Assembly: GCA_033442325.1 (NCBI GenBank) | Contig: JAWQFM010000002.1 | Location: 2,200,413-2,223,987 of the forward strand | Source: Salpingoeca rosetta | Lineage: Eukaryota > Protista > Choanoflagellata | Direction: 5' to 3' | Length of the DNA stretch: 23,575 nucleotides | Shown: positions 1,238 to 23,575 of the stretch, in pieces | Position numbering within the stretch: the stretch's first letter is position 1 | Layout of the letters: each line of letters begins with the position of its first letter | Program-made: the position numbers and the translations under genes | The notes under the pieces: model-generated | Told to the model about the DNA's origin: nothing | The model's input: only the letters and a program-made list of their open reading frames with translations | The model's database searches: none

Positions 1238-2161
1238 CGTATCGGTTGTGCTGACTCAGCAATTTAAATTAACAGTCTTCTTGCTTCACTTGTCACCCAA
1301 GGATGACCATGCGCATACCGCAAGTGCCAGCGAACAGCAATGAACAACGGAAGCATGTCTGAGATGTGTTCCTTGCACGGTTGTTGCTTGGCGAGGTCTC
1401 CAAGTCCCACAGCTTCGACATCCTCCAGGTCACACCGCAGCATCAACAGCGCGCTGCTGCGCCGCTTTCAACAGCAACACGACCCGTGGACTTTATGGAA
1501 GACGAACCAGACACCATGATCGAGTAGAACAGGCTGCTGCTACTGCGTGTCTGATGTCGCACATACTTCCTGTTTGGTGTGTTTGTTCATGTCAGTGGGA
1601 AGAGAGAAGTGCTGTGGGTAATTGTGTCACTTGCTGGGTTATCTGTGGACGACCACTTCGTCTGGTTTCGTTATGTATGGGCTGCAACGCCACTGCTCAT
1701 TCTGCTCGTTTGTGTTGCTTTGCTTTCTCAGCATATTACATTAACCACCGTTCCGCTGCGAGCCAAGTTGTTTATTCATCGTCGTACAGCATCTCACCCG
1801 CCCGTATGCTCGTGAACAGTAAATGAACATGATTCGCATCATGCACACGTACGTGAAGGAAACACGCAATCGAGCACACGTGAAGGAAACACAGCATCAC
1901 ATGTACGTCAATCAAGCCTACGGTAGCAGAGAAGACACACACACACTTCCACGCCACGCACACACACACACACCCACGCCACACACACACACACACACAC
2001 ACAAATACACACGCGCGCACGACCCGCACCACTCGCCGAGGTCACTGATTGCACGATTGGGAAAGGCTGTTTGGGCAAGGCAGGGCGCTAAAAGTGGCAG
2101 CGCTTGTGCACGGTGAGGCCACACAAGTCGCACAAGTACACTTTCTTGCCAACACCGAAGA

Positions 2162-10425
<8,264 letters not shown>

Positions 10426-11766
10426 GGCTCCTTGCGTGTGTGTGTGTGTGGTGTGTGTTGTCCTCTTTGTTTCGTCGTCTTCCGCCTCCTCCACAATCGA
10501 CTTTTACCCACCAACAAAACAAACTCTCTGGCAAAATTGAGATTGCCAACATCAAATCACGACAGCGCTGCCTTGTTTGTTCGCTGCTTCAAGGCACACA
10601 GTGGGTTGCTTGTGGGCAAAGTTTTGCTTGCGCTTGGACTGGACGCGTGCTCGCGTTCGTGCAGTGGCATGCAAGGAAAGTGGTTTACAAGCAGGTAGGC
10701 AAGACTCGATGGGTTGCCCCACCCGGAGGAGAACTACAACAGCAAGGAGGACGAGGACGAGGACGAGGACGAGCGATAAACAGGAAAACAAGCAATCATG
10801 AAAGCAAACAAAGCGGACACAGAAGCACTCAGAAGCACTCGGGTCGAATCGATTGGGGGGTGGAGGACTGACCGAGCGAGCTCGCGCTTTGTTGGTGCTG
10901 CCAAGGGGCTTGCGCCCAAAACGACGCGAGCAAGTGCAAAGGTCAACATGGGGAAATGTAAGACGACGACCACAGGTGAATCACAGTGAAGGTGTGAAGC
11001 AAACACTCGAAATTCAGAACAAACAGATCTGAAAGAAGCAAACACAAAAACACACACGACCACAACCCAAACCAAAGGCCTCGAAATGCACAATCAATGC
11101 GAGCGGCAAACAAAACAAGCAGCAGCAAGGCGCTGAAGCCCAAGCTGAAACGCAACAGAACGAGAGAACGGGAAGATGTGGCAGGCATTTGAATTTGTGA
11201 ACTGTGTGAAAAGAACGAAATGACATGAACGAAGCGGGCAACCCCCGCCTGAGTGGAGAAAGTGGAGAAAGTGAACAAGTGCAGAGAATGGAGGACTTGA
11301 AACAACGTCAAACACCAAACACAAGACACAAAAGCACGGATGGGCTGAAAAGCGCGTACAACTAACTGCACTTCACCGCGATCAAAACAGCCCACCCGTC
11401 ACACCTAACAACGAAATGCACACCGGTGCATGCAGGCAAACCAATCAAACCACACACACACACACACACACACGCACACACACACACACACACGCACACA
11501 CACACACACGCACACACACACACATACACACACATACACACACACACCAGCGTCTGGGACAGAAGAGGGGGAAGATGGGACTGGGGAGAGGAGTAGCAAT
11601 CGTGCCCTAGCTGACTAGCGTACTACGTGGATGTCAATGTGGAAAGTCGAGATCTGAGTCAGACATCTACTTGCCGAGAAGTATTTGGTGCTGAGGTTGA
11701 GGTTGGGGGGGGGGGACGAACGGAGTGAAGCGCAGCAACACAAGCATGACAGCTTCCTGAGAGAGC

Positions 11767-12812
11767 TTATGCCCTCGTATCAGGTCCATGCTCGCCACTC
11801 CCGTCGCTGCTGCCGCTACTGTCACTACTGCTACCACTGCTACTGCTGCCGCTGCCCGCATCACCATCGCCACCACTGTCGCTACTACTGCCACTGCTAC
11901 TGCTGCCGCTGCTGCTGTCGTCACTTCCGTCAGGGTGCGAGCGACGTCCCGCGGTCGTGTTGCTTTTCCGGGCATCCTTGACAGAGGCGCTGGCACCGTC
12001 TGACGTCGAGCGGGCCTGTGCTGCCAGTCCAGTCGGTTGGCCTTGGTCGTGGTTGTTGAGCTTTGTCATCGAAGCACCTGAGACAGCCTCGCTCTTGGGT
12101 TCTGCGCCTTGGGTTTCGGTGTGGCCGTCCATGTCCGCACGTGTCGAGGCAGCAGTGGTGGCGGTATCCTTTGCACCGTTCGCGGTGCCGTTCACTGTGG
12201 CGCTGGCCTGCTGGCCGCCGTCCTGGGACGCCGTGGCAGCCTGCCCTTGCTGCACCTGCTGTGGCTGCTGTTGCAGCTGGGATTGCAAGTGCTGCTGCAT
12301 CTGCTGCATCTGCTGCAGTTGCTGGCCTTGCTGGCCTTGCTGGGCGTAGCTGGTGGGGAACGACAGGCTCATGCCGGGGGACATGAAGCCCATGGCCGCC
12401 CATGCTGCTTGCTCCTCCGGCGTCGTGAAGCCAACAATCTCCGGGCGCTTGCGGCAGTAAGCACGCTCATGTTTGCGGCGGTTGCTGCTGTTGTTGAAGG
12501 CGTAATCGCAGTACCTGCAGCGATACGGCTTGGCGCCTGGTAACGTGTCGTCGTTCGTGATGAAAAGAGGCAAATGAGGCATTGTTGGTTGTCTGTGAGT
12601 GAGCAGTTTATGGGACAATATGCGTGTGTGCATTTGTGTGCGCGTGTGCGTATATCTGTGTGTTGTGTTGTGTGTTGTGTTGTGTTGTGTGTCTGTGTGT
12701 GTGTCTGCGTGTGTGTGTGTGTGTGTTGTGCGTGCGTGTGTGTGTGTGTGTGTCTGCGTGTGTGTGTGTGTGAGAAGCAAGCGGTGGCGTGGAGGACGCC
12801 CAGCGTCAAGAG

Positions 12813-12857
<45 letters not shown>

Positions 12858-12904
12858 GTGTGTGTGTGTGTGTGTGTGTGTGCGTGTGTGTGTGTGTGTG
12901 TGTG

Positions 12905-12955
<51 letters not shown>

Positions 12956-15197
12956 GGCGTGGGCGCATGTGTGTGTGTGTGTATTCGTACACACGCGGTG
13001 ATGCAGGTCTCGCTCTCTTCGTCTCTGGTGTAATGCGCACAGAGGATGCAGGCACAGTGCACAGGTGTAAGGCTGCAGTACGCAGGTGGTTGCATGCACG
13101 CAAACGCCAAAGGCCGTACCGGTATGAATGCGGCGGTGGCGACTCAAGTTGCTGCTGCTGGCAAAGCACTTGCCGCACAGCTTGCACTGGTGTTTTCCCG
13201 TCTGCTTGGCCGAAAAGGAACTGGAACGAATGGCTGCCAGTGGTGCTGCCTCGCTCGAAGGCACCTGCAGTGGGTCCAGAACACGGCCAATGGTGCAGCC
13301 ACGGCATTTGAACAACAATCAATGAGTGCCAACAACCAACCGTGTCAGTACCGAGTCAAGGTTTACACCCAATAAGCGCTTCTGCTTGCATGCATGCACG
13401 CAAGCGAAACGACAACTGAATGCAGCCATCACGTGAAACAAAGCCAAGACAAAGGCCTGTCTTCCCTCCAACATCCCAAGGCCCACCACATGCATGAACT
13501 GACGGACCGCTGTTCCTGGAGTGGCCACTGTTGCCAGAGTCATTGGGGAGGCTGCGTGAGGACCAGATGTTAGAGCCATGGTAGTCATCGTCCCTGGAAG
13601 TGCCATTGACCATGAAGGTTGCTGTGCAGCTGACATTGCGTGGGGAGCTGAGGCCAGCCAAACATACGTGCGGGTGGCGTAGGGCAGACGGATATAGAAG
13701 CCACGGATGACACGCAAACGATAGTATGTGCGGGTGAGATTGTGCGTGTGTGAGCGAGTGTGTGAGCGAGGAGGAAACGCGATTGTGATGCAGGGACAAC
13801 CCCACAGGCCAATGCACTACATGCATGCAATCAAGTCCACGATGACCCACAGGTTTCCACGCTTTCCCGTTTGCACGCCAATGCTTGAGCTTCACGTACA
13901 TTGTGGATGATAGTACTGCAGTGGAGCACCAGCTTGCATGGGGAACATGAGCTGCGGTGGCATTTGCAGATGTCCAAATGAAGCCGGGGCGAAGGATGCC
14001 ATTTGCATCATTGGATATGAAGCCGGTTGAAGCGCCATGGCGTGCTCCTGATGTGCGATGGGTCTGGGTGGGCCTTGCTGCATCTGTGGTTGTTGCTGCT
14101 GCTGTTGTGGCTGTTGTTGTTGTGCTTGCAGCTGCTGTAATGCAGGAAAGGGCATGTAGGAGGGTGCGAGTGCCTGTTGTGCCTGCTGCCCTCCTGTCGC
14201 GCTCGCCAGTTGCGGCTGCTGGCCGGCAAGCGTTGGTGGCATACCCGCAAAGGGTGCTCCCATTGGTGGCTGCGCAAACGCACCAGATGGCTGCTGCTGT
14301 TGTGGTTGTTGCTGTTGTGGTTGTTGCTGTTGTGGTTGTTGCTGCTGTGGTTGTTGTTGCGCTTGTTGTTGTTGGGGCTGCTGCTGAGCAAACGCAAGCG
14401 CGGCTCCCATCGCCTGCTGCTGCTGCTGCTGCTGTTGTTGTTGTGGACCAGCCATCATGTGTTGTGGAAACATCTACAAACCAATTGAGAAGCCACAGCA
14501 TCGTTACAACCAGTGGATAATAATGCATGTGTGCATGGTTGTACATGTAACGTATTGTGCACTGTGGTGTGTGTGTGTGTGGGTGTGGGTGTGTTGTATG
14601 CATGTGTGGATTGTATGTTTGTGTGGATTGTGGATTGGGGTGCATGTGTGGAAAGATGTGTGACTTTGTGTGTGCCTGGCTTTGTGAGTCTGGCGTTGTG
14701 TGTGGCTTCGGTGGCCTTGTGCACGTGCATGGCCTTGTATGCCTTGAAGGTGACGCCAACATGCACCAAGAGAGGATGCAAGGGGCCAAGGATACGATGG
14801 AAGGCCAAAGAGCACCTACCCTGCTTTGGAGTTGGAGAGCGGGGGAAAAGCTTGGGGGCATGGTCGCTGTGGGTGCTTGTTGCCCCTGGGAGGTGGGCAG
14901 GTGAGGTCGAGGGTGGTAGACCATGTTGTGCTGTTGCTGTGGAGGCTGGTGTTGCACCATGTGTGGTTGTTGCTGCTGCTGCTGTTGCTGCTGAAAGTAA
15001 GGGTACGGAGGCGTGATGAAGGCCTGCGCGGGGTTGGTTGCCTGCGCCTGCATGGCTGCCATCATGGCTGCACTTGGCGTCGACGTTTGAAGCGGGACGG
15101 AAGCAGGGGCTTGTGAGGAACCAGAAGCGGCTGCGTGCTGCGCTGACGCCGAGTCCATGGGCGATGGCTGCTTCGTACCATGGCTCTGACGATCCAT
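11767..15197 (-). CDS. Gln/Pro-rich zinc-finger transcription factor A (C2H2 finger + C2HC finger), ~668 aa, 5 exons
   Basis: Exons 15197-14820, 14473-13900, 13647-13508, 13264-13120, 12536-11767 (phases 0,1,0,1; TAA at 11767-11769). Fingers: [52 protein letters not shown], with a TGEKP-like linker. Long poly-Q/Pro/Met N-terminus and Ser/Gly-rich tail. Confidence 0.88.
12623..12982. repeat. Interrupted (TG)n microsatellite cluster in the intron splitting the zinc-finger linker of gene A
   Basis: Directly visible; within predicted intron 12537-13119. Confidence 0.9.
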
Positions 15198-15264
15198 CGC
15201 TGTCAGTCATGGTTTGTTGTGTTGTGTGTGTGATTGTGTTTGTTTGTTTGTTTGTTTGTTTGTT

Positions 15265-15299
<35 letters not shown>

Positions 15300-16517
15300 T
15301 TGTTCGTGTGTGTGTGTGTGTAGTGTGTATGTGTGTGTGTGTGTGTTTGGGTTTGTGTGTGTGTTTGTTTGTGTGGCATAAGCATGTGTGGAAGATTACA
15401 TCTAGGGATGCATGCAGGCACGACGCATGCAGGCACGGCTTTGACGACAAGAAGAAGTAATGCACGGGTGTCGTGTGCATAGCGCTTGCATGGTTTCACT
15501 TGCTTGCAAGCAAAGCGCTTACACCCCACAAGATCCAGGAAGCATCATCAACACTACAGCTGTCCGCACTGACCGATCTCGCCCATTGGGTTGTAGAGGG
15601 GGTGAGCGATAGCGGTCGTGGTGGTGGTCTTCAGGAATCGAGGCTGAAGAGAAACAGGGGAGGGTGTGTGTTCGTGTGTGTGCGTGACAGTCAATTCAGG
15701 GGATGAGAGCCAAGAGTCGATTGCCACGTTGTGAAAGCAGTGCTTTTCCAAAAGCCAACACCGATCGCACACACACAAACACACGCATGCAGGGCAGGGA
15801 TAGTGCTACGTGTGCTATGGGAGCACCTGCAGTTTTAGCAGAGCCGACCGCAGGAAAGCACCTAAACAAACCCACCAGGCGAACGCTGACGATTTGGGAG
15901 ATGTGGATTGTGAAGAAGAGGGGGTAGGGCAGGAAGATTTGATGAAGCTAAAGGGTAAACTGAGTCTGTCGCGGCGTGGTGTTGGTGTGGAAGGGCAGTG
16001 GCCTTCCTTCCTTCCTTCGCTTTCCTTGTTGCTTCCCTTCCTTGTTTTTGCTGTTTGGTGAGAGTTAACAACCACAACTGCAACCGCAGCCAACCAAGCG
16101 GTCGAGGAACGACGATGAAGGAAGCAAAGCACGGGCACAAAGGGCAAGAAGTGCGTGCAGGCGTGTGGGATGGCGAACGTTGACGTGTGTGTGAAGGAAT
16201 GACGCTGTCGAAAAACAGAGGAAAGTGTGTGCGAACGAGCGATGCAGCAATAGTGCGTGATGAACGGCAGAGGAGTTTGTGTGGAGAAGAGTTGGGGCTT
16301 GACCAGCTTTTGTGCCACCGCAATGACGCTTTCTTGGAAATGACGTGAGTGCCTCCCCACCACAGCATGCATGCAGGCAATTATCGTCACTTTGTCCCAG
16401 TTCGAGGCCTCGTTGGTGTGCATTTTTGAACGGGACATTCGGGGCAATCACACATCATTGCATGCAAGCCCAAGAGCATCGAATCAAATGAAAAATTAAT
16501 GCAGGATAATGATGAAG

Positions 16518-16740
16518 GTGTTGTGAGTGTGTGTTGTGGGTGTGTTTGTGTGTTGTGAGTGTGTGTTTGTGTGTTGTGAGTGTGTGGTATGAGTGTGTGT
16601 TTGTGTTGTGTGTGTTGTGAGTGTGTTGTGAGTGTGTTGTGAGTGTGTGTTGTGAGTGTGTGTTGTGAGTGTGTGTGTGTTTGTGTGTTGTGAGTGTGTG
16701 TTTGTGTGTTGTGAGTGTTGGGTATGTGTTTGGGTGTGTG
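16518..16740. repeat. Degenerate TG-rich repeat with recurring GTGTTGTGAGT units, downstream of zinc-finger gene B
   Basis: About 10 TTGTGAGTG(T)-like units embedded in TG runs. Confidence 0.75.
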
Positions 16741-16986
16741 CGTCATCATGAGTGTCATGCGGGTGAAGTGGTGTGATACAAGCATGAATGGTTGGGGTGT
16801 GACTAGCGCTTGAGTTGCTCAGTTGCGCAGTTGCTGGTGCCTTCTAGCTACTAGGCGTATCCTTGTTGAGCTGGGTCTGCTTCAACGGAAAGCTTGCGAC
16901 GACAACGACAACAGCAACGACAACGGCGAAGATGACACGCGGGGAGTCGTGCCGGACGACAATGCCTGTTGCCGTTGCTGCTGTCG

Positions 16987-19659
<2,673 letters not shown>

Positions 19660-20290
19660 GGTGTCGACGGAGGGTGTCCGCCTCGCCTGCTGTGCGTGGC
19701 AGGTGGTCGTGCTCCTGAGGGTTCTTTCTGCTTTCTTCTTATGCGTTCCTTGTCGCCTTTGTCGAAGGAGAAGCAGAGAGAGTGTGTGAGTGTGTTTGTG
19801 GGAGAGAGTGTGAGAGCGTGAGGGGTAGGAGCAGTCGTTGGCACAATCGCGAGGTGCTGATGAACGCTGAAAGTGCGATTGCCACAAAACCAACGGGCTT
19901 GGGTTTGGTCGTTGCGTTGTTGCCTGAAGAAAGGGAGAGAAGAAAGGGAGAGGGGGGGGACAACAGCACAAACACCACCACTTCGTTGTCCCTCCCAACT
20001 GACAACACAACAACTGCCACCTTTTGCTTGCTGTTCTCAAAGCACAACGACACACACAACAAACAAAACTCGCCGCCGCCCCACACATGCGCCCACCTCG
20101 CAGAAGCCAGAACGACAGAAGCAACGCACAAGAAAGAAGGAGCGCGGACGAGTCGTTGCTCGCCCCAAATTGCAGGGGCACTTCTTCAAGCAAGAATTTT
20201 TAAGCAAATCATACGCAAATCACCAAACCACAGTTCTACAACAGCACAAAAAGTGGCGACAGTGGTGGTGTCCGGGTTTTCAAGAGCGTG

Positions 20291-20345
<55 letters not shown>

Positions 20346-20394
20346 TGTGTCTGTGTGTGTGTCTGTGCGTGCGTGTGTGTCTGTGTCTGTCTGG

Positions 20395-21299
20395 NNNNNN
20401 NNNNNNNNNNNNNNNNNNNNNNNNNNNNNNNNNNNNNNNNNNNNNNNNNNNNNNNNNNNNNNNNNNNNNNNNNNNNNNNNNNNNNNNNNNNNNNNNNNNN
20501 NNNNNNNNNNNNNNNNNNNNNNNNNNNNNNNNNNNNNNNNNNNNNNNNNNNNNNNNNNNNNNNNNNNNNNNNNNNNNNNNNNNNNNNNNNNNNNNNNNNN
20601 NNNNNNNNNNNNNNNNNNNNNNNNNNNNNNNNNNNNNNNNNNNNNNNNNNNNNNNNNNNNNNNNNNNNNNNNNNNNNNNNNNNNNNNNNNNNNNNNNNNN
20701 NNNNNNNNNNNNNNNNNNNNNNNNNNNNNNNNNNNNNNNNNNNNNNNNNNNNNNNNNNNNNNNNNNNNNNNNNNNNNNNNNNNNNNNNNNNNNNNNNNNN
20801 NNNNNNNNNNNNNNNNNNNNNNNNNNNNNNNNNNNNNNNNNNNNNNNNNNNNNNNNNNNNNNNNNNNNNNNNNNNNNNNNNNNNNNNNNNNNNNNNNNNN
20901 NNNNNNNNNNNNNNNNNNNNNNNNNNNNNNNNNNNNNNNNNNNNNNNNNNNNNNNNNNNNNNNNNNNNNNNNNNNNNNNNNNNNNNNNNNNNNNNNNNNN
21001 NNNNNNNNNNNNNNNNNNNNNNNNNNNNNNNNNNNNNNNNNNNNNNNNNNNNNNNNNNNNNNNNNNNNNNNNNNNNNNNNNNNNNNNNNNNNNNNNNNNN
21101 NNNNNNNNNNNNNNNNNNNNNNNNNNNNNNNNNNNNNNNNNNNNNNNNNNNNNNNNNNNNNNNNNNNNNNNNNNNNNNNNNNNNNNNNNNNNNNNNNNNN
21201 NNNNNNNNNNNNNNNNNNNNNNNNNNNNNNNNNNNNNNNNNNNNNNNNNNNNNNNNNNNNNNNNNNNNNNNNNNNNNNNNNNNNNNNNNNNNNNNNNNN
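20395..21299. other. Assembly gap (905 N), probably containing the remaining DUF1365-like exons
   Basis: Run of N flanked by TG microsatellites. Confidence 0.99.
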
Positions 21300-21316
21300 G
21301 TGTGTGTGTGTGTGTG

Positions 21317-21401
<85 letters not shown>

Positions 21402-21512
21402 GGAAGGGAGGAAGCAAGCAAGCAAGCAAGCACAAACACAAAGAAAGAAAGGAAGGAAGGAAGGAAGGAAGGAAGGGTAAGACGGCATTGGTTTACATGT
21501 GTTTCCACATAC

Positions 21513-23381
21513 CGCCTGGTCACCAAAGTAGTCGCGCCGGAACAGGCCACCCCACCACGTCTGGAAGCCCGCATCAACGTTGATGCAGTGGTACTCCAGC
21601 GGATAGCGGAAGGAGTGTACCACCTTGCCCGTGCTGGGGTTAAATCTGCAGCAGACCACGCCACACCCGAGGACACGAGCGTCAGCACAAAGCTCACTGA
21701 CGTTGCGCACATGCAGCCTTGAAGAAACGTCCGCGACTAACACAGCGCTCTCGCTTGACTTGATGACGAATGTACACACTTGTGTACGCGTGGGCATTTG
21801 TGTATGCATCCGCTTGTGCGTGCGTGTATGCATGCATACCTGACGTGTGTGGTTGACCCTTTGAGCAGGAAGTGGGTTGGATGAAAGGCGTCTCCAGAGA
21901 TGGGCAGCAGGGGAATGCTCGTGTCCTGTCAGAGAAACCACACCCATCACGTACATGACGATGGTGACGATGATGATGATGATGGTGATTGTTATTCTTT
22001 CCTTCGCACACGCACACGAGCATGCAGTGTGCATCGTCAACAACGGCAGTCGGACACGTCCGGAAGCACGCACACACGCACACGCACACACACGTACACA
22101 CGTACACACGTACATACATACATACATACACACGCCAACTACCTTGAGGAGCGTGCGAGCGACTTCGATGCCGCTGCGAAAGCCATCTTCGTGGAAGCCG
22201 TAGTGCAGGTACGCACCAGCGTACCACACGCCGCCCTTGCCCTGATGGTGCTCGTGCACACGGCGCTGGCAGCGAAGAGCGTCAACCGTCATCATCGGAT
22301 GCTGCGTGCGCCACTCCATCAACACATCCCGCCGTCGCTGCTTGTGCTCAAGCATGTACGCCGGTGGGTTGAGGGAAATGAACACGTTGTCCGACTTGAT
22401 GTGCTGAAGCGGCTTCACCCAATATGTCAGCAGCGGGCGGTCGCCTGTCTCTTCCCGCTCAATCACGTTCCACGAACTCCACAGCGCGCGATCCCTGTGG
22501 TGTGTGTTGGGTGTGTGTGTGGGTGGGGGGGCTGTGGTATGAGACAAGCTTTGTCGGTGTGCATGGGCGAGCAAGAGACGTTCCATGAACAGCCAGCACA
22601 CACGCACACGAGACATACACAACACATGCACACGCACACGGGCTTGACGGCACCTTGGCATGAGGTCTGGGTTTGTGTGCAAGAGGACTGTGTTTGAGCT
22701 GCACTTGAAGCCGGAGAGCGCATCAACATCGTCCTGTGTCGGTGCCTCCAGTAGCTCCAGCGCCAGGCCCGAGGGGGTGGCGAGCACAACATCATCAAAC
22801 ACGCGCTCCCCTTGCGTTTCCGACGTGACCGCCACGGTGCCGTCTTCCTGGCGCCGCACAGCGTGCACGGGGTTGGCGGTGTGTACCTCCACGCCAAGAT
22901 GCTCAAAGAGATGGCGAAACAGCTTCAGTGTGAGCGTTGTTCGTCCGCGCGGCGTGTACCACTGCGGCGTCGACCACGTGAGGAACCCGTGGTTGCGCAG
23001 AAAGGCGAGGATGGAGTACGCGTCCATGGCCATGGCCTCGGACTTTGGTGCAGACCACACCGCCTCGCAGAACGGCTTGAGCCAGCCCTCCATGAACGCA
23101 GCGCCGTAGCCGTGCTTGGTGCAGAACTCCAGCAGCGAGAGCGCTGGCGCCGTCGCTGCGTCTGCATCCCGGTAGCGCTCGAGGAAGGCGAGCGCATCCG
23201 AGTGGAAGCGCGTCTTGTCCTTGACGAAGGACGGCAACTTGGGGTGCCTGAGTAGCTGCAACTGCTGTGGTAGGGACGACGACAGGCACCATGAGATGGT
23301 GGGGTTGTCGATGGAGAAGCCCATGTCCGTGGCCTGCAGTGGCACATGGTGCTGTTCGTAGAACCTCAGCAAGTTGGGGTA
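21513..23381 (-). CDS. Fusion of COG2907-type FAD-dependent oxidoreductase (UfaD-like) and DUF1365-like domain (UfaO-like); partial at both ends (5' outside window, 3' in gap)
   Basis: Exons 23381-22654, 22494-22143, 21925-21840, 21645-21513 (phases 2,0,2,0; GT-AG). Oxidoreductase motifs: YPNLLRFY..DMGFS, GYGAAFMEGWLKPFCEAVWS, FLRNHGFL..PQWYT, FDDVVLATP, LHTNPDLMPR..LWSSWN, TYWVKPLQ, QGKGGVWYAGAYLHYGFHEDGFRSGIEVA. The frame continues without a stop into LLKGSTTHVRF...HSFRYPLEYHCINVD...LFRRDYFGD, matching the DUF1365 N-terminal pattern (G...H.R....H.F.Y......D). Confidence 0.82.
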
Positions 23382-23575
23382 CTGGCACATACAAGCAGGC
23401 CATCAGACACGTGAGGGACCGCAATCAGGAGAGTTGGGGAAGGGGGAAGATGGCAGACAACGGGTCAGCCAAGGGAGCTGGCAGACACACACGGGAAACG
23501 GAAAACACACTATCGCCGTGTGACACAGGCAGTGGTATAGACAAGCCAGCGGCGACAGATGTTCTCAGAGAGAGA

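What the first reader, a model, noticed from the sequence alone, without database searches (positions are those of the whole stretch)
21513..23381. Spliced eukaryotic UfaD-UfaO-like fusion: candidate furan/modified fatty-acid biosynthesis enzyme in a probable choanoflagellate
Seen: a COG2907-type flavoprotein ending in GAYLHYGFHEDG..SG.EVA splices in frame, with no stop, through a short linker (DTSIPLLPISGDAFHPTH) into a DUF1365-like N-terminus (G.T.HVR..HSFRY..D..RRDYFG). Established: in bacteria these two families are adjacent separate genes in operons with cyclopropane-synthase-like methyltransferases. In Rhodobacter sphaeroides the corresponding pair (RSP1091 UfaD desaturase, RSP1090 UfaO) converts the UfaM-methylated fatty acid into a furan fatty acid that scavenges reactive oxygen. 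In some plants the same flavoprotein domain is instead fused to a cyclopropane synthase. Inference: two consecutive pathway steps are fused in operon order in one intron-bearing gene. This suggests an operon-derived (possibly horizontally acquired) bifunctional enzyme and an unrecognised lipid-modification/antioxidant pathway in this organism.
Basis: partly seen in the sequence, partly recalled or inferred. Interest (0 to 1): 0.85.

Follow-up and report, generated by a model that had tools for sequence, protein, structure and literature searches.

The report
Choanoflagellate fused UfaD–UfaO-like lipid enzyme
This is a real, spliced gene of the choanoflagellate Salpingoeca rosetta that joins a flavin desaturase-like enzyme to a DUF1365 domain, the two enzymes bacteria use one after the other to make furan fatty acids; the fusion is shared with other protists, but the assembly holds only part of the gene and no partner methylase was found.

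Summary
Observation confirmed. Four minus-strand exons (23381-22654, 22494-22143, 21925-21840, 21645-21513) with GT..AG introns give one open frame. It runs from a COG2907/Amino_oxidase flavoprotein ("D"), through an IPLLP linker, into the first ~55 residues of a DUF1365 domain ("O").

The organism is Salpingoeca rosetta. The public model PTSG_01452 uses the same junctions, but both of its ends are artefacts of assembly gaps (905 N downstream, 5,327 N upstream).

The Monosiga brevicollis orthologue (739 aa, 48% identical, collinear across the junction) has a complete DUF1365 domain (Pfam 1e-29). At least two, probably three, intron positions and a Munc13-like neighbour gene are shared.

Both halves fall in a clade whose every identifiable member is eukaryotic and carries a D-O or D-O-methylase ("M") fusion: three choanoflagellates, Flabellula, Aphanomyces and eukaryotic metagenome contigs. 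Bacterial D-O fusions arose separately. Recent HGT is therefore not supported.

In bacteria the D→O→M operon is near universal (69/69 upstream, 73/75 downstream). The link to UfaD/UfaO rests on homology and gene order only.

No UfaM/CMAS-type methylase was found in the S. rosetta assembly, so the furan-fatty-acid product is unproven. The architecture is visible in databases but I found no paper describing it. Interest is moderate.

The parts
23382..23575 (-). 3' end of the intron that precedes exon A (pyrimidine-rich, ends ..CCAG). The annotated start ATG at 23390 lies in it and is an artefact. The true upstream exon(s), about 71 residues with the GxGxxG FAD site, lie in the 5,327-N gap just beyond the window.
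   Evidence: An in-frame TGA lies shortly upstream of the ATG. Monosiga residues 1-71 have no match anywhere in the assembly.
22654..23381 (-). Exon A: flavoprotein (D) domain, YPNLLRFY.. to ..DLMP(R). Aligns to Monosiga residues 72-319.
   Evidence: (E 5.6e-73). Pfam Amino_oxidase. The donor position and phase 2 are shared with Monosiga.
22495..22653 (-). Intron A/B (GT..AG, phase 2).
   Evidence: The same position and phase occur in Monosiga.
22143..22494 (-). Exon B: C-terminal part of the D domain, including the FAD-contact motif GAYLHYGFHEDG. It ends at ..ARTLLK.
   Evidence: (E 1.5e-33).
21926..22142 (-). Intron B/C (GT..AG, phase 0), rich in GT repeats.
21840..21925 (-). Exon C: inter-domain linker (DTSIPLLPISGD..) and the first strand of the DUF1365 (O) domain (..KGSTTHV-R). 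It holds no Met, so it cannot start a separate protein.
   Evidence: The IPLLP linker is conserved in the eukaryotic D-O fusions.
21646..21839 (-). Intron C/D (GT..AG, phase 2), inside the DUF1365 domain.
   Evidence: A GT donor at the same codon and phase exists in Monosiga.
21513..21645 (-). Exon D: DUF1365 positions up to the conserved R.D.FGD motif. It ends ..RRDYFGDQA, followed by GTATGT.
   Evidence: (E 2e-13, 60% identity to Monosiga 479-523). The donor position and phase 0 are shared with Monosiga.
21300..21512 (-). Start of the next intron (GTATGT.., then CTT/CA microsatellites) running into the gap.
20395..21299 (.). Assembly gap of 905 N. It should hold the rest of the DUF1365 domain. 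In Monosiga that part is one 648-nt exon (residues 525-739), which would fit.
20209..20235 (-). Nine-codon 'terminal exon' (NCGLVICV*) of the public model PTSG_01452. It has no homology to any relative and is taken as an annotation artefact that closes the frame across the gap.

Best explanation
What it is. The locus is a genuine, expressed, intron-bearing nuclear gene of Salpingoeca rosetta. It is seen only in part because the assembly has a gap on each side. It encodes a single polypeptide with two joined domains.
- The N-terminal domain (D) is a monoamine-oxidase-fold FAD enzyme of the COG2907/UfaD type.
- A short ordered IPLLP linker joins it to a DUF1365/UfaO-type beta-rich domain (O).
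- In the complete relatives the protein ends in a hydrophobic C-terminal helix.

How it probably works (inferred). By homology and by the bacterial D→O→M gene order, the D domain dehydrogenates an unsaturated acyl chain of a membrane or lipid-droplet lipid to a conjugated diene. The O domain then uses O2 to close an oxygen heterocycle, which in Rhodobacter is a furan. The fusion hands the intermediate directly from one step to the next.

History. The fusion is old within eukaryotes. It is shared by choanoflagellates, an amoebozoan and, with an added methylase, an oomycete. It is not a recent bacterial transfer.

Shown: exon structure, reading frame, domain homology, orthology with Monosiga, clade membership, bacterial synteny.
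Inferred: the chemistry, the substrate and the membrane location.

My odds: real fused gene about 0.9; UfaD/UfaO-like two-step acyl-chain modification about 0.55; product is a methylated furan fatty acid as in Rhodobacter about 0.3. The confidence given for this explanation (0.55) is that of the two-step acyl-chain modification.
For: Frame and splice sites. The public model PTSG_01452 uses the same junctions.

Indirect RNA evidence: eleven runs from four studies hold 0.64 of the sampled 31-mers of 21513-23381. That equals the share expected if exactly the four exons and no intron are held (1179/1839 = 0.641). Exons A and B alone would give 0.555.

Orthologue: Monosiga MONBRDRAFT_30477 is collinear from residue 72 to 522 across the junction at 48% identity. 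It carries Amino_oxidase (81 bits) and DUF1365 (104 bits). Introns are shared, and so is a Munc13-like neighbour.

Conserved residues in the visible S. rosetta part: 10/10 invariant and 22/23 near-invariant D positions, and 6/6 near-invariant O positions.

Other fusions: Craspedida sp. UC1, Flabellula baltica, Aphanomyces invadans (D-O-M) and eukaryotic metagenome contigs.

Trees:
- O domain: Monosiga lies in a starred (97) clade of 16 rows scored as 10 D-O and 6 O-only. The O-only rows are fragments or proteins whose diverged D half my mapping missed.
- D domain: Salpingoeca and Monosiga are sisters (96) inside an all-D-O set (96) and a D-O plus D-O-M set (99).

Bacterial synteny: 69/69 D directly upstream, 73/75 CMAS directly downstream.

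Literature: UfaD, UfaO and DUF1365 (PMC7380195).

Structure: the AlphaFold2 model of the whole Monosiga protein has pLDDT 91.7 and pTM 0.91 with an ordered linker. The nearest solved structure to the D domain is LkcE, an amine oxidase/cyclase (E 2e-30, TM 0.8).
Against: - Most of the DUF1365 domain and the FAD-binding N-terminus of the S. rosetta gene are not in the assembly.
- The Pfam hit of the S. rosetta piece is below threshold, and the family search of the genome found nothing.
- No reads could be laid. No read or contig was seen to join exon B to exon C.
- No UfaM/CMAS-type methylase was found in S. rosetta. In bacteria O almost always travels with M.
- No member of the eukaryotic clade has been assayed.
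- Identity to the characterised RSP1091 and RSP1090 proteins was not measured here.
- The D/O binding test gave no answer.
Confidence: 0.55

Rival explanations
1. Same fused enzyme, different chemistry. Choanoflagellates lack the methylase, so the D-O protein would not make methylated furan fatty acids from their own lipids. Instead it would act on unmethylated unsaturated chains, giving non-methylated furan or other oxygenated fatty acids. Or it would act on methyl-branched or cyclopropane acyl chains taken up from bacterial prey.
For: No CMAS/UfaM-type gene was found with four queries. The only CMAS-family hits are sarcosine/dimethylglycine N-methyltransferase-like. The eukaryotic D-O clade has its own signature (WWGGL in place of the bacterial LDL.ELD stretch) and long branches. 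A bacterivorous animal is known to process bacterial cyclopropane and methyl fatty acids (PMC10876521).
Against: The assembly has many gaps, and this gene itself is half lost in two of them, so a methylase could be hidden. Sister eukaryotic lineages keep M fused to D-O (Aphanomyces) or next to it (L014). That argues the ancestral substrate was methylated. No lipid data exist.
Confidence: 0.3
2. Gene-model artefact or decaying gene. Exons C and D would be a remnant or a separate unit, and S. rosetta would make only the flavoprotein, or nothing functional.
For: The DUF1365 part seen is short and below the Pfam threshold. The public model is visibly patched at both ends. No read-level junction evidence was obtained.
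Against: Exon C has no Met and starts right after an AG in phase with exon B. The linker and the O start are conserved residue by residue with Monosiga and other fusions. The 0.64 word share fits all four exons in RNA-derived contigs from four studies. The exon D donor sits at the same codon as the Monosiga intron that leads to the remaining 215 residues.
Confidence: 0.06
3. Recent horizontal transfer of a bacterial ufaD-ufaO operon into choanoflagellates, or bacterial contamination of the assembly, followed by fusion.
For: The domain order equals the operon order. Both families are far more abundant in bacteria.
Against: The gene has four spliceosomal introns and eukaryotic neighbours. Intron positions are shared between two choanoflagellate genera. 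The closest relatives by far are eukaryotic fusions (E 1e-155 to 1e-33), against about 1e-30 for the best bacteria, which come from many unrelated phyla with no stand-out donor. Bacterial D-O fusions (Nocardioides, Calidifontibacter) form separate clades in both trees. An ancient bacterial origin of the whole eukaryotic clade is not excluded, because the trees are unrooted.
Confidence: 0.04

Closest known systems
Rhodobacter (Cereibacter) sphaeroides UfaD (RSP1091) and UfaO (RSP1090), furan fatty acid pathway (Lemke et al. 2020, PMC7380195)
   Same: The same two protein families: an FAD amine-oxidase-fold enzyme encoded directly upstream of a DUF1365 protein, in the same order D then O. The conserved DUF1365 motifs are retained in the Monosiga orthologue and, as far as they are visible, in S. 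rosetta.
   Different: In Rhodobacter these are separate genes in an operon, working with the methylase UfaM. Here they form one spliced eukaryotic polypeptide with a linker and, in complete relatives, a C-terminal hydrophobic helix. No methylase was found. Identity to the Rhodobacter proteins was not measured here, and activity is untested.
Monosiga brevicollis MONBRDRAFT_30477 (739 aa, uncharacterised)
   Same: It is the orthologue: 48% identity, collinear across the D-O junction, with shared introns and a shared Munc13-like neighbour.
   Different: The Monosiga gene is complete. The S. rosetta gene is visible only for the part matching Monosiga residues 72-523. The Monosiga model probably keeps about 17 intronic codons (residues ~464-481).
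Arabidopsis AtUFAMD1 (AT3G23510, D-methylase fusion) and AtUFAO1 (AT1G30130, DUF1365), lipid-droplet proteins (Omata et al. 2024, PMC10940516)
   Same: They are eukaryotic homologues of the same bacterial pathway, proposed but not shown to make furan fatty acids. They also use domain fusion of pathway partners.
   Different: Plants fuse D with M and leave O separate. Choanoflagellates fuse D with O and have no detectable M. In the D tree the sampled D-M-type proteins (mostly unnamed; Arabidopsis itself was not in the tree) fall on the same side as the bacteria-labelled sequences, outside the D-O clade.
Aphanomyces invadans H310_14130 (1312 aa) and related D-O-M triple fusions
   Same: It belongs to the same eukaryotic clade in both domain trees, and it aligns with Monosiga across the D-O junction.
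   Different: It carries a C-terminal CMAS methylase domain, which the choanoflagellate proteins lack.
LkcE of Streptomyces rochei (PDB 6F7L/6FJH), dual amine oxidase/cyclase
   Same: It is the nearest solved structure to the D domain (Foldseek E 2e-30, TM 0.8, 23% identity). It has the MAO/PPOX-type FAD fold.
   Different: It has a different substrate (a lankacidin precursor) and no DUF1365 partner. This is a fold relative only.

Membership tests
DUF1365 (Pfam PF07103) / UfaO family | Match to the PF07103 profile above the gathering score (25 bits) | tested here: inconclusive
   The S. rosetta piece scores 16.7 bits, E 0.006, on profile positions 1-34 only, because the rest lies in the 905-N gap. 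The family search of the genome found nothing. A custom profile gives 35.3 bits against at most 3.8 for 1000 shuffles. The Monosiga orthologue scores 104 bits over positions 14-232.
DUF1365 (Pfam PF07103) / UfaO family | Family-wide conserved residues (H.R near the start, R.D..G, FNP, NTPW, K..HVSPF) | tested here: inconclusive
   Monosiga keeps the conserved positions of alignment A1. In S. rosetta 6 of 6 positions in view are kept (H390, R392, F404, R428, D430, G433). The other 19 lie in the gap.
DUF1365 (Pfam PF07103) / UfaO family | O2-dependent conversion of a methylated diene acyl chain to a furan | not testable with these tools
   This is known only for RSP1090 and RPA2570 (PMC7380195).
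UfaD-type (COG2907) FAD-dependent acyl-chain desaturase | Amine-oxidase-fold flavoprotein (PF01593 above threshold) | tested here: met
   47.3 bits against a cut-off of 19.8 for P0001. The closest homologues are named 'predicted NAD/FAD-binding protein' by JGI. The fold matches LkcE, PPOX and MAO.
UfaD-type (COG2907) FAD-dependent acyl-chain desaturase | Bacterial homologues encoded directly upstream of a DUF1365 gene | tested here: met
   Bacterial homologues found with the S. rosetta exon A query (P0016, P0018) sit immediately upstream of DUF1365 and CMAS genes. The same arrangement is seen at the locus of P0110, a stand-alone bacterial DUF1365 found with the Monosiga O-domain query. D lies directly upstream in 69 of 69 bacterial DUF1365 loci.
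UfaD-type (COG2907) FAD-dependent acyl-chain desaturase | N-terminal GxGxxG dinucleotide-binding motif | tested here: inconclusive
   This region falls in the 5,327-N gap for S. rosetta. It is present in Monosiga (VVGAGIAG). The C-terminal FAD motif GAYLHYGFHEDG is present in S. rosetta.
UfaD-type (COG2907) FAD-dependent acyl-chain desaturase | Direct sequence similarity to the characterised RSP1091 | not tested
   The RSP1091 and RSP1090 sequences could not be obtained with the tools. The 80 bacterial loci fetched held no Rhodobacter.
Complete furan fatty acid pathway (UfaM + UfaD + UfaO) | A CMAS-family fatty-acyl C-methylase (UfaM) in the same genome | tested here: not met
   PF02353 found four places. 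The two above the cut-off are sarcosine/dimethylglycine N-methyltransferase-like. Methylase domains from Chromosphaera, Aphanomyces and an Actinopolyspora operon found nothing better. Caveat: the search works exon by exon on a gapped assembly.
Complete furan fatty acid pathway (UfaM + UfaD + UfaO) | Furan fatty acids in the organism's lipids | not testable with these tools
   No paper in the library mentions both furan fatty acids and choanoflagellates.
Eukaryotic D-O fusion clade (Monosiga, Craspedida UC1, Flabellula and others) | One polypeptide that aligns collinearly across the D-linker-O junction with other members | tested here: met
   P0001 aligns with P0002 across the junction. Single-stretch alignments of Monosiga run across both halves with Flabellula (E 2.5e-155) and P0025; Craspedida UC1 (E 3.5e-113) matches both halves in three stretches.
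Eukaryotic D-O fusion clade (Monosiga, Craspedida UC1, Flabellula and others) | Both halves place the protein in the same clade, apart from bacterial sequences | tested here: met
   In the D tree Salpingoeca and Monosiga lie inside starred D-O (96) and D-O/D-O-M (99) sets. In the O tree Monosiga lies in a starred 16-row clade (97). The S. rosetta O piece was too short to enter the O tree.

The most novel reading that the evidence does not exclude
An ancient, eukaryote-wide D-O fusion enzyme lets heterotrophic protists make furan-type or related oxygen-heterocyclic fatty acids without a methylase of their own. These protists include choanoflagellates, the closest living relatives of animals. 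The substrates would be unmethylated chains or prey-derived lipids. This would be a methylase-independent eukaryotic route to these antioxidant lipids, and a single-gene handle on their unknown eukaryotic biosynthesis.
Probability: 0.15. Interest if true: 0.65.

Novelty: new variant of a known kind. Interest (0 to 1): 0.42.

Why it matters
Furan fatty acids are radical- and singlet-oxygen-scavenging lipids found in plants, algae, fish and some bacteria. Their enzymes are known only from two alphaproteobacteria. Eukaryotic candidates, in Arabidopsis, are so far only localised and not assayed.

A single-chain D-O enzyme conserved in choanoflagellates, an amoebozoan and stramenopiles gives three things:
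- strong "Rosetta-stone" evidence that the flavoprotein and DUF1365 act together;
- a compact construct for heterologous assays of the still mysterious DUF1365 step, which has no solved structure and no clear fold relative;
- a testable hint that bacterivorous protists contribute to, or transform, such lipids.

It also corrects two public gene models. The finding is not a surprise in kind, because fusions of operon partners are common and this architecture is already visible in databases.

Tried and rejected
- Read laying. So there is no read-level junction, strand or depth evidence. Later work used proteins, other window ranges, or the window cut at 20394.
- Upstream DNA. The 5,327 bases after the window end read N, so the N-terminal exon(s) could not be found. 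Monosiga residues 1-71 and 523-739 match nothing else in the assembly.
- PF07103 search of the whole genome. There was no hit. This reflects the short exon-wise piece, not absence.
- Single exons C and D against Pfam and NCBIfam. Nothing was found, because the pieces are too short.
- Partner methylase. Only betaine-pathway-type N-methyltransferases were found. Monosiga, UC1 and Flabellula could not be searched with the tools left.
- Binding test of the D domain against the O domain. The result was 'no answer', which is evidence neither for nor against.
- Fold of DUF1365. Foldseek found no PDB match at E <= 0.001. The best VIA-align Z was 6.5 (a designed beta-barrel), with OlmO spirocyclase at 6.3 and nitrobindin-like barrels at 5.4-5.8. 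All are within the tool's stated noise range. A profile search of PDB sequences found nothing.
- Direct comparison with RSP1091 and RSP1090. The sequences were not obtainable. The scan of named bacterial genomes returned 80 loci and none was Rhodobacter.
- Earlier notes of this scan. Nothing bears on this gene.
- Literature. No paper links choanoflagellates with furan or cyclopropane fatty acids.
- Contamination or recent HGT was considered and rejected, as set out under the rival explanations.
Full report
**1. What is in the sequence**

The feature lies on the minus strand. Reading 23575 to 20200 and splicing by script gives four exons:
- A: 23381-22654
- B: 22494-22143
- C: 21925-21840
- D: 21645-21513

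Each exon is preceded by AG and followed by GT. Joined, they form one stop-free frame of 433 codons.

These are GAYLHYGFHEDGFRSGIEVA, the linker DTSIPLLPISGDAFHPTH, GSTTHVR, HSFRY and RRDYFGD. Exon C contains no methionine and begins in phase with exon B, so it cannot open a separate protein.

Downstream of exon D there is a GTATGT donor, then microsatellites, then 905 N (20395-21299). The 5,327 bases beyond the window end also read N.

**2. Identity of the gene**

A protein search with exon A returned a 100% match to PTSG_01452 of Salpingoeca rosetta (444 aa, 'hypothetical protein'). It also returned a 47%-identical 739-aa protein of Monosiga brevicollis, MONBRDRAFT_30477, carrying both Amino_oxidase and DUF1365.

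The S. rosetta model uses the same four exons. It starts at an ATG inside the upstream intron (23390). It ends in a nine-codon exon beyond the gap (20235-20209) that resembles nothing. Both ends are artefacts of the gaps.

The two proteins align collinearly from Monosiga residue 72 to 522, straight through the linker, at 48% identity. A search of the whole S. rosetta assembly with the Monosiga protein finds exons A, B and D. It finds nothing for residues 1-71 or 523-739. In Monosiga, residues 525-739 are one 648-nt exon, which would fit the 905-N gap.

**3. Is the tail really DUF1365?**

- Alone, exons C and D are too short for Pfam.
- An 82-residue stretch of P0001 covering the end of exon B and all of exons C and D hits PF07103 at 16.7 bits (cut-off 25), E 0.006, on profile positions 1-34.
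- A 77-residue version of the same stretch scores 35.3 bits against a DUF1365 profile built here without Monosiga, where the best of 1000 shuffles scores 3.8. Against the bacteria-type rows only it scores 15.1 bits against 6.6.
- All six near-invariant DUF1365 positions that fall in view are kept. So are 10/10 invariant and 22/23 near-invariant positions of the flavoprotein half.
- The Monosiga orthologue scores 104 bits over positions 14-232.

The S. rosetta evidence nonetheless covers only the first quarter of the domain.

**4. Expression**

The run index gives indirect evidence. Eleven runs from four studies hold 0.64 of the sampled 31-mers of 21513-23381. Three genome-sized runs hold about 1.00. 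If exactly the four exons and no intron are held, the expected share is (698+322+56+103)/1839 = 0.641. Without exons C and D it would be 0.555. This fits spliced RNA that contains all four exons, but it does not show the joins.

**5. Vertical history in choanoflagellates**

I mapped the Monosiga protein on its locus.
- The A/B intron has the same codon and phase 2 in both species (..LMPR|D against ..LMPK|N).
- The intron after exon D has the same codon and phase 0 in both (GDQA| against GDSE|).
- For the C/D intron, Monosiga has a GT donor at the same codon and phase. Its model uses a donor 17 codons further on. That extra stretch is the only low-confidence part of the structure models, so it is probably unspliced intron.
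- The Munc13-like gene that flanks the Monosiga gene matches window 2151-10290 (up to 38% over 268 residues, E 1e-56). The neighbourhood is therefore retained.

A third choanoflagellate, Craspedida sp. UC1, has a 936-aa D-O fusion.

**6. Wider distribution**

I mapped three domains on the 310 proteins fetched: D (flavoprotein), O (DUF1365) and M (CMAS methylase). The architectures were:

| Architecture | Count |
|---|---|
| D-O | 23 |
| D-M | 29 |
| O-M | 7 |
| D-O-M | 6 |
| D-M-O | 6 |
| O-D | 2 |
| O-D-M | 1 |
| M-O | 1 |

Named members:
- Flabellula baltica, Amoebozoa: D-O, 42% identity to Monosiga over the full length, E 2.5e-155
- Aphanomyces invadans, oomycete: D-O-M
- Chromosphaera perkinsii and Euglena gracilis: D-M-O
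- Nocardioides (D-O) and Calidifontibacter (D-O-M), both bacteria

Two unnamed metagenome contigs carrying D-O-M and D-O are eukaryotic by their neighbours, which include actin, Ras, RCC1, VHS and SARAF.

Trees of each half agree.
- O tree: Monosiga lies in a starred (97) clade of 16 rows, scored by my mapping as 10 D-O and 6 O-only. The O-only rows are fragments or long proteins whose diverged D half the mapping missed.
- D tree: Salpingoeca and Monosiga are sisters (96), inside an all-D-O set (96) and a D-O plus D-O-M set (99).
- Every bacteria-labelled sequence, including the bacterial D-O fusions, lies elsewhere.

The best bacterial DUF1365 matches reach about 1e-30 and come from many phyla with no stand-out donor.

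Recent HGT and contamination are therefore rejected. An ancient bacterial origin of the whole eukaryotic clade cannot be judged, because the trees are unrooted and were built with a quick search.

**7. Link to the furan fatty acid pathway**

Lemke et al. 2020 (PMC7380195) show three things:
- RSP1091 (UfaD) converts 11Me-12t-18:1 to the 10t,12t diene.
- RSP1090 (UfaO, a DUF1365 protein) uses O2 to form the furan.
- In R. palustris, ufaD, ufaO and ufaM are adjacent.

Here, bacterial homologues of the window's flavoprotein sit directly upstream of DUF1365 and CMAS genes, with overlapping ends. Among 80 bacterial DUF1365 loci, D is directly upstream in 69 of 69 testable cases. CMAS is directly downstream in 73 of 75. 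The fusion order D then O equals the operon order.

Plants have a D-M fusion and a separate O on lipid droplets. These are proposed but untested furan fatty acid enzymes (PMC10940516, PMC13247531).

**8. The missing methylase**

The S. rosetta assembly gives only four PF02353 places. The two above the cut-off are sarcosine/dimethylglycine N-methyltransferase-like (1.5e-100 and 4e-96 to NF041675). Methylase domains from Chromosphaera, Aphanomyces and a bacterial operon find nothing better.

The assembly is gapped, however, and the search works exon by exon. Other choanoflagellates could not be searched.

**9. Structure and mechanism**

- The Monosiga O domain models confidently (pLDDT 86.9) as a mostly beta domain followed by two helices, the last one hydrophobic.
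- It has no PDB relative above noise.
- The whole Monosiga protein models at pLDDT 91.7 and pTM 0.91 with an ordered linker. This is consistent with one compact two-domain enzyme.
- The nearest solved structure to the D half is the amine oxidase/cyclase LkcE (E 2e-30, TM 0.8), well ahead of PPOX and MAO.
- A D-against-O binding test gave no answer.

The proposed mechanism is inference from homology. It is FAD-dependent dehydrogenation to a conjugated diene, then O2-dependent ring closure, on lipid-bound acyl chains at a membrane or lipid droplet.

**10. Verdict**

- It is a real choanoflagellate D-O fusion in operon order.
- It is not a recent transfer and is not unique to this organism.
- Its product is unproven, because no methylase was found and most of the O domain is not in the assembly.

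I found no paper on it, but the architecture is visible in public databases. I class it as a new variant of a known kind, of moderate interest.

Noticed in passing
L013:11815-11870 (Monosiga brevicollis CH991593.1), protein P0002 residues ~464-481: The Monosiga model MONBRDRAFT_30477 probably retains about 17 intronic codons (YFKPPGMALFLPADTFCQ). An upstream GT donor in the same phase matches the S. rosetta C/D intron. The stretch is the only low-confidence part of the AlphaFold2 models.
   Followed up: partly
window 23388-23390 and 20209-20235; L005:1-5327: The public S. rosetta model PTSG_01452 has an artefactual start (ATG inside an intron) and an artefactual nine-codon last exon. The gene is flanked by a 5,327-N gap and a 905-N gap.
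   Followed up: yes
window 2151-10290, minus strand: A Munc13-like gene (C2 domain at 9436-10494; up to 38% identity over 268 residues to the Monosiga neighbour that has C2, MUN and C1 domains). It is a neighbour of the D-O gene in both choanoflagellates, though in a different relative orientation.
   Followed up: partly
L001:1414-2331 and L002:1258-2205 (G000 contig C1): Two intron-free ORFs of 305 and 315 aa strongly resemble bacterial sarcosine/dimethylglycine N-methyltransferase (E 1e-100 and 4e-96, below the equivalog cut-off). They are candidate glycine-betaine synthesis genes in S. rosetta.
   Followed up: partly
L014:6878-12634 (JGI metagenome contig Ga0591047_0002904): A diverged D-O fusion (P0027, 877 aa) lies head to head with a 926-aa D-M fusion. 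The three activities are thus split over two adjacent fusion genes in an unnamed organism.
   Followed up: no
L016, L017, L018 and L021-L100 (bacterial loci): The bacterial D→O→M cluster often also carries DUF1295, DUF2878, lipocalin or SRPBCC genes and an ECF sigma / anti-sigma pair. This recalls the singlet-oxygen regulon of Rhodobacter.
   Followed up: partly
window 12467-19800, minus strand: A glutamine-rich C2H2 zinc-finger-like gene with long poly-Q/poly-T tracts and two 100-N gaps lies between the Munc13-like gene and the D-O gene.
   Followed up: no
window 20280-23390, minus strand: Frame 0 stays open through all introns and the gap (a 1036-codon 'ORF'). This is a by-product of stop-poor GT/CA-rich introns and is not coding evidence.
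   Followed up: yes
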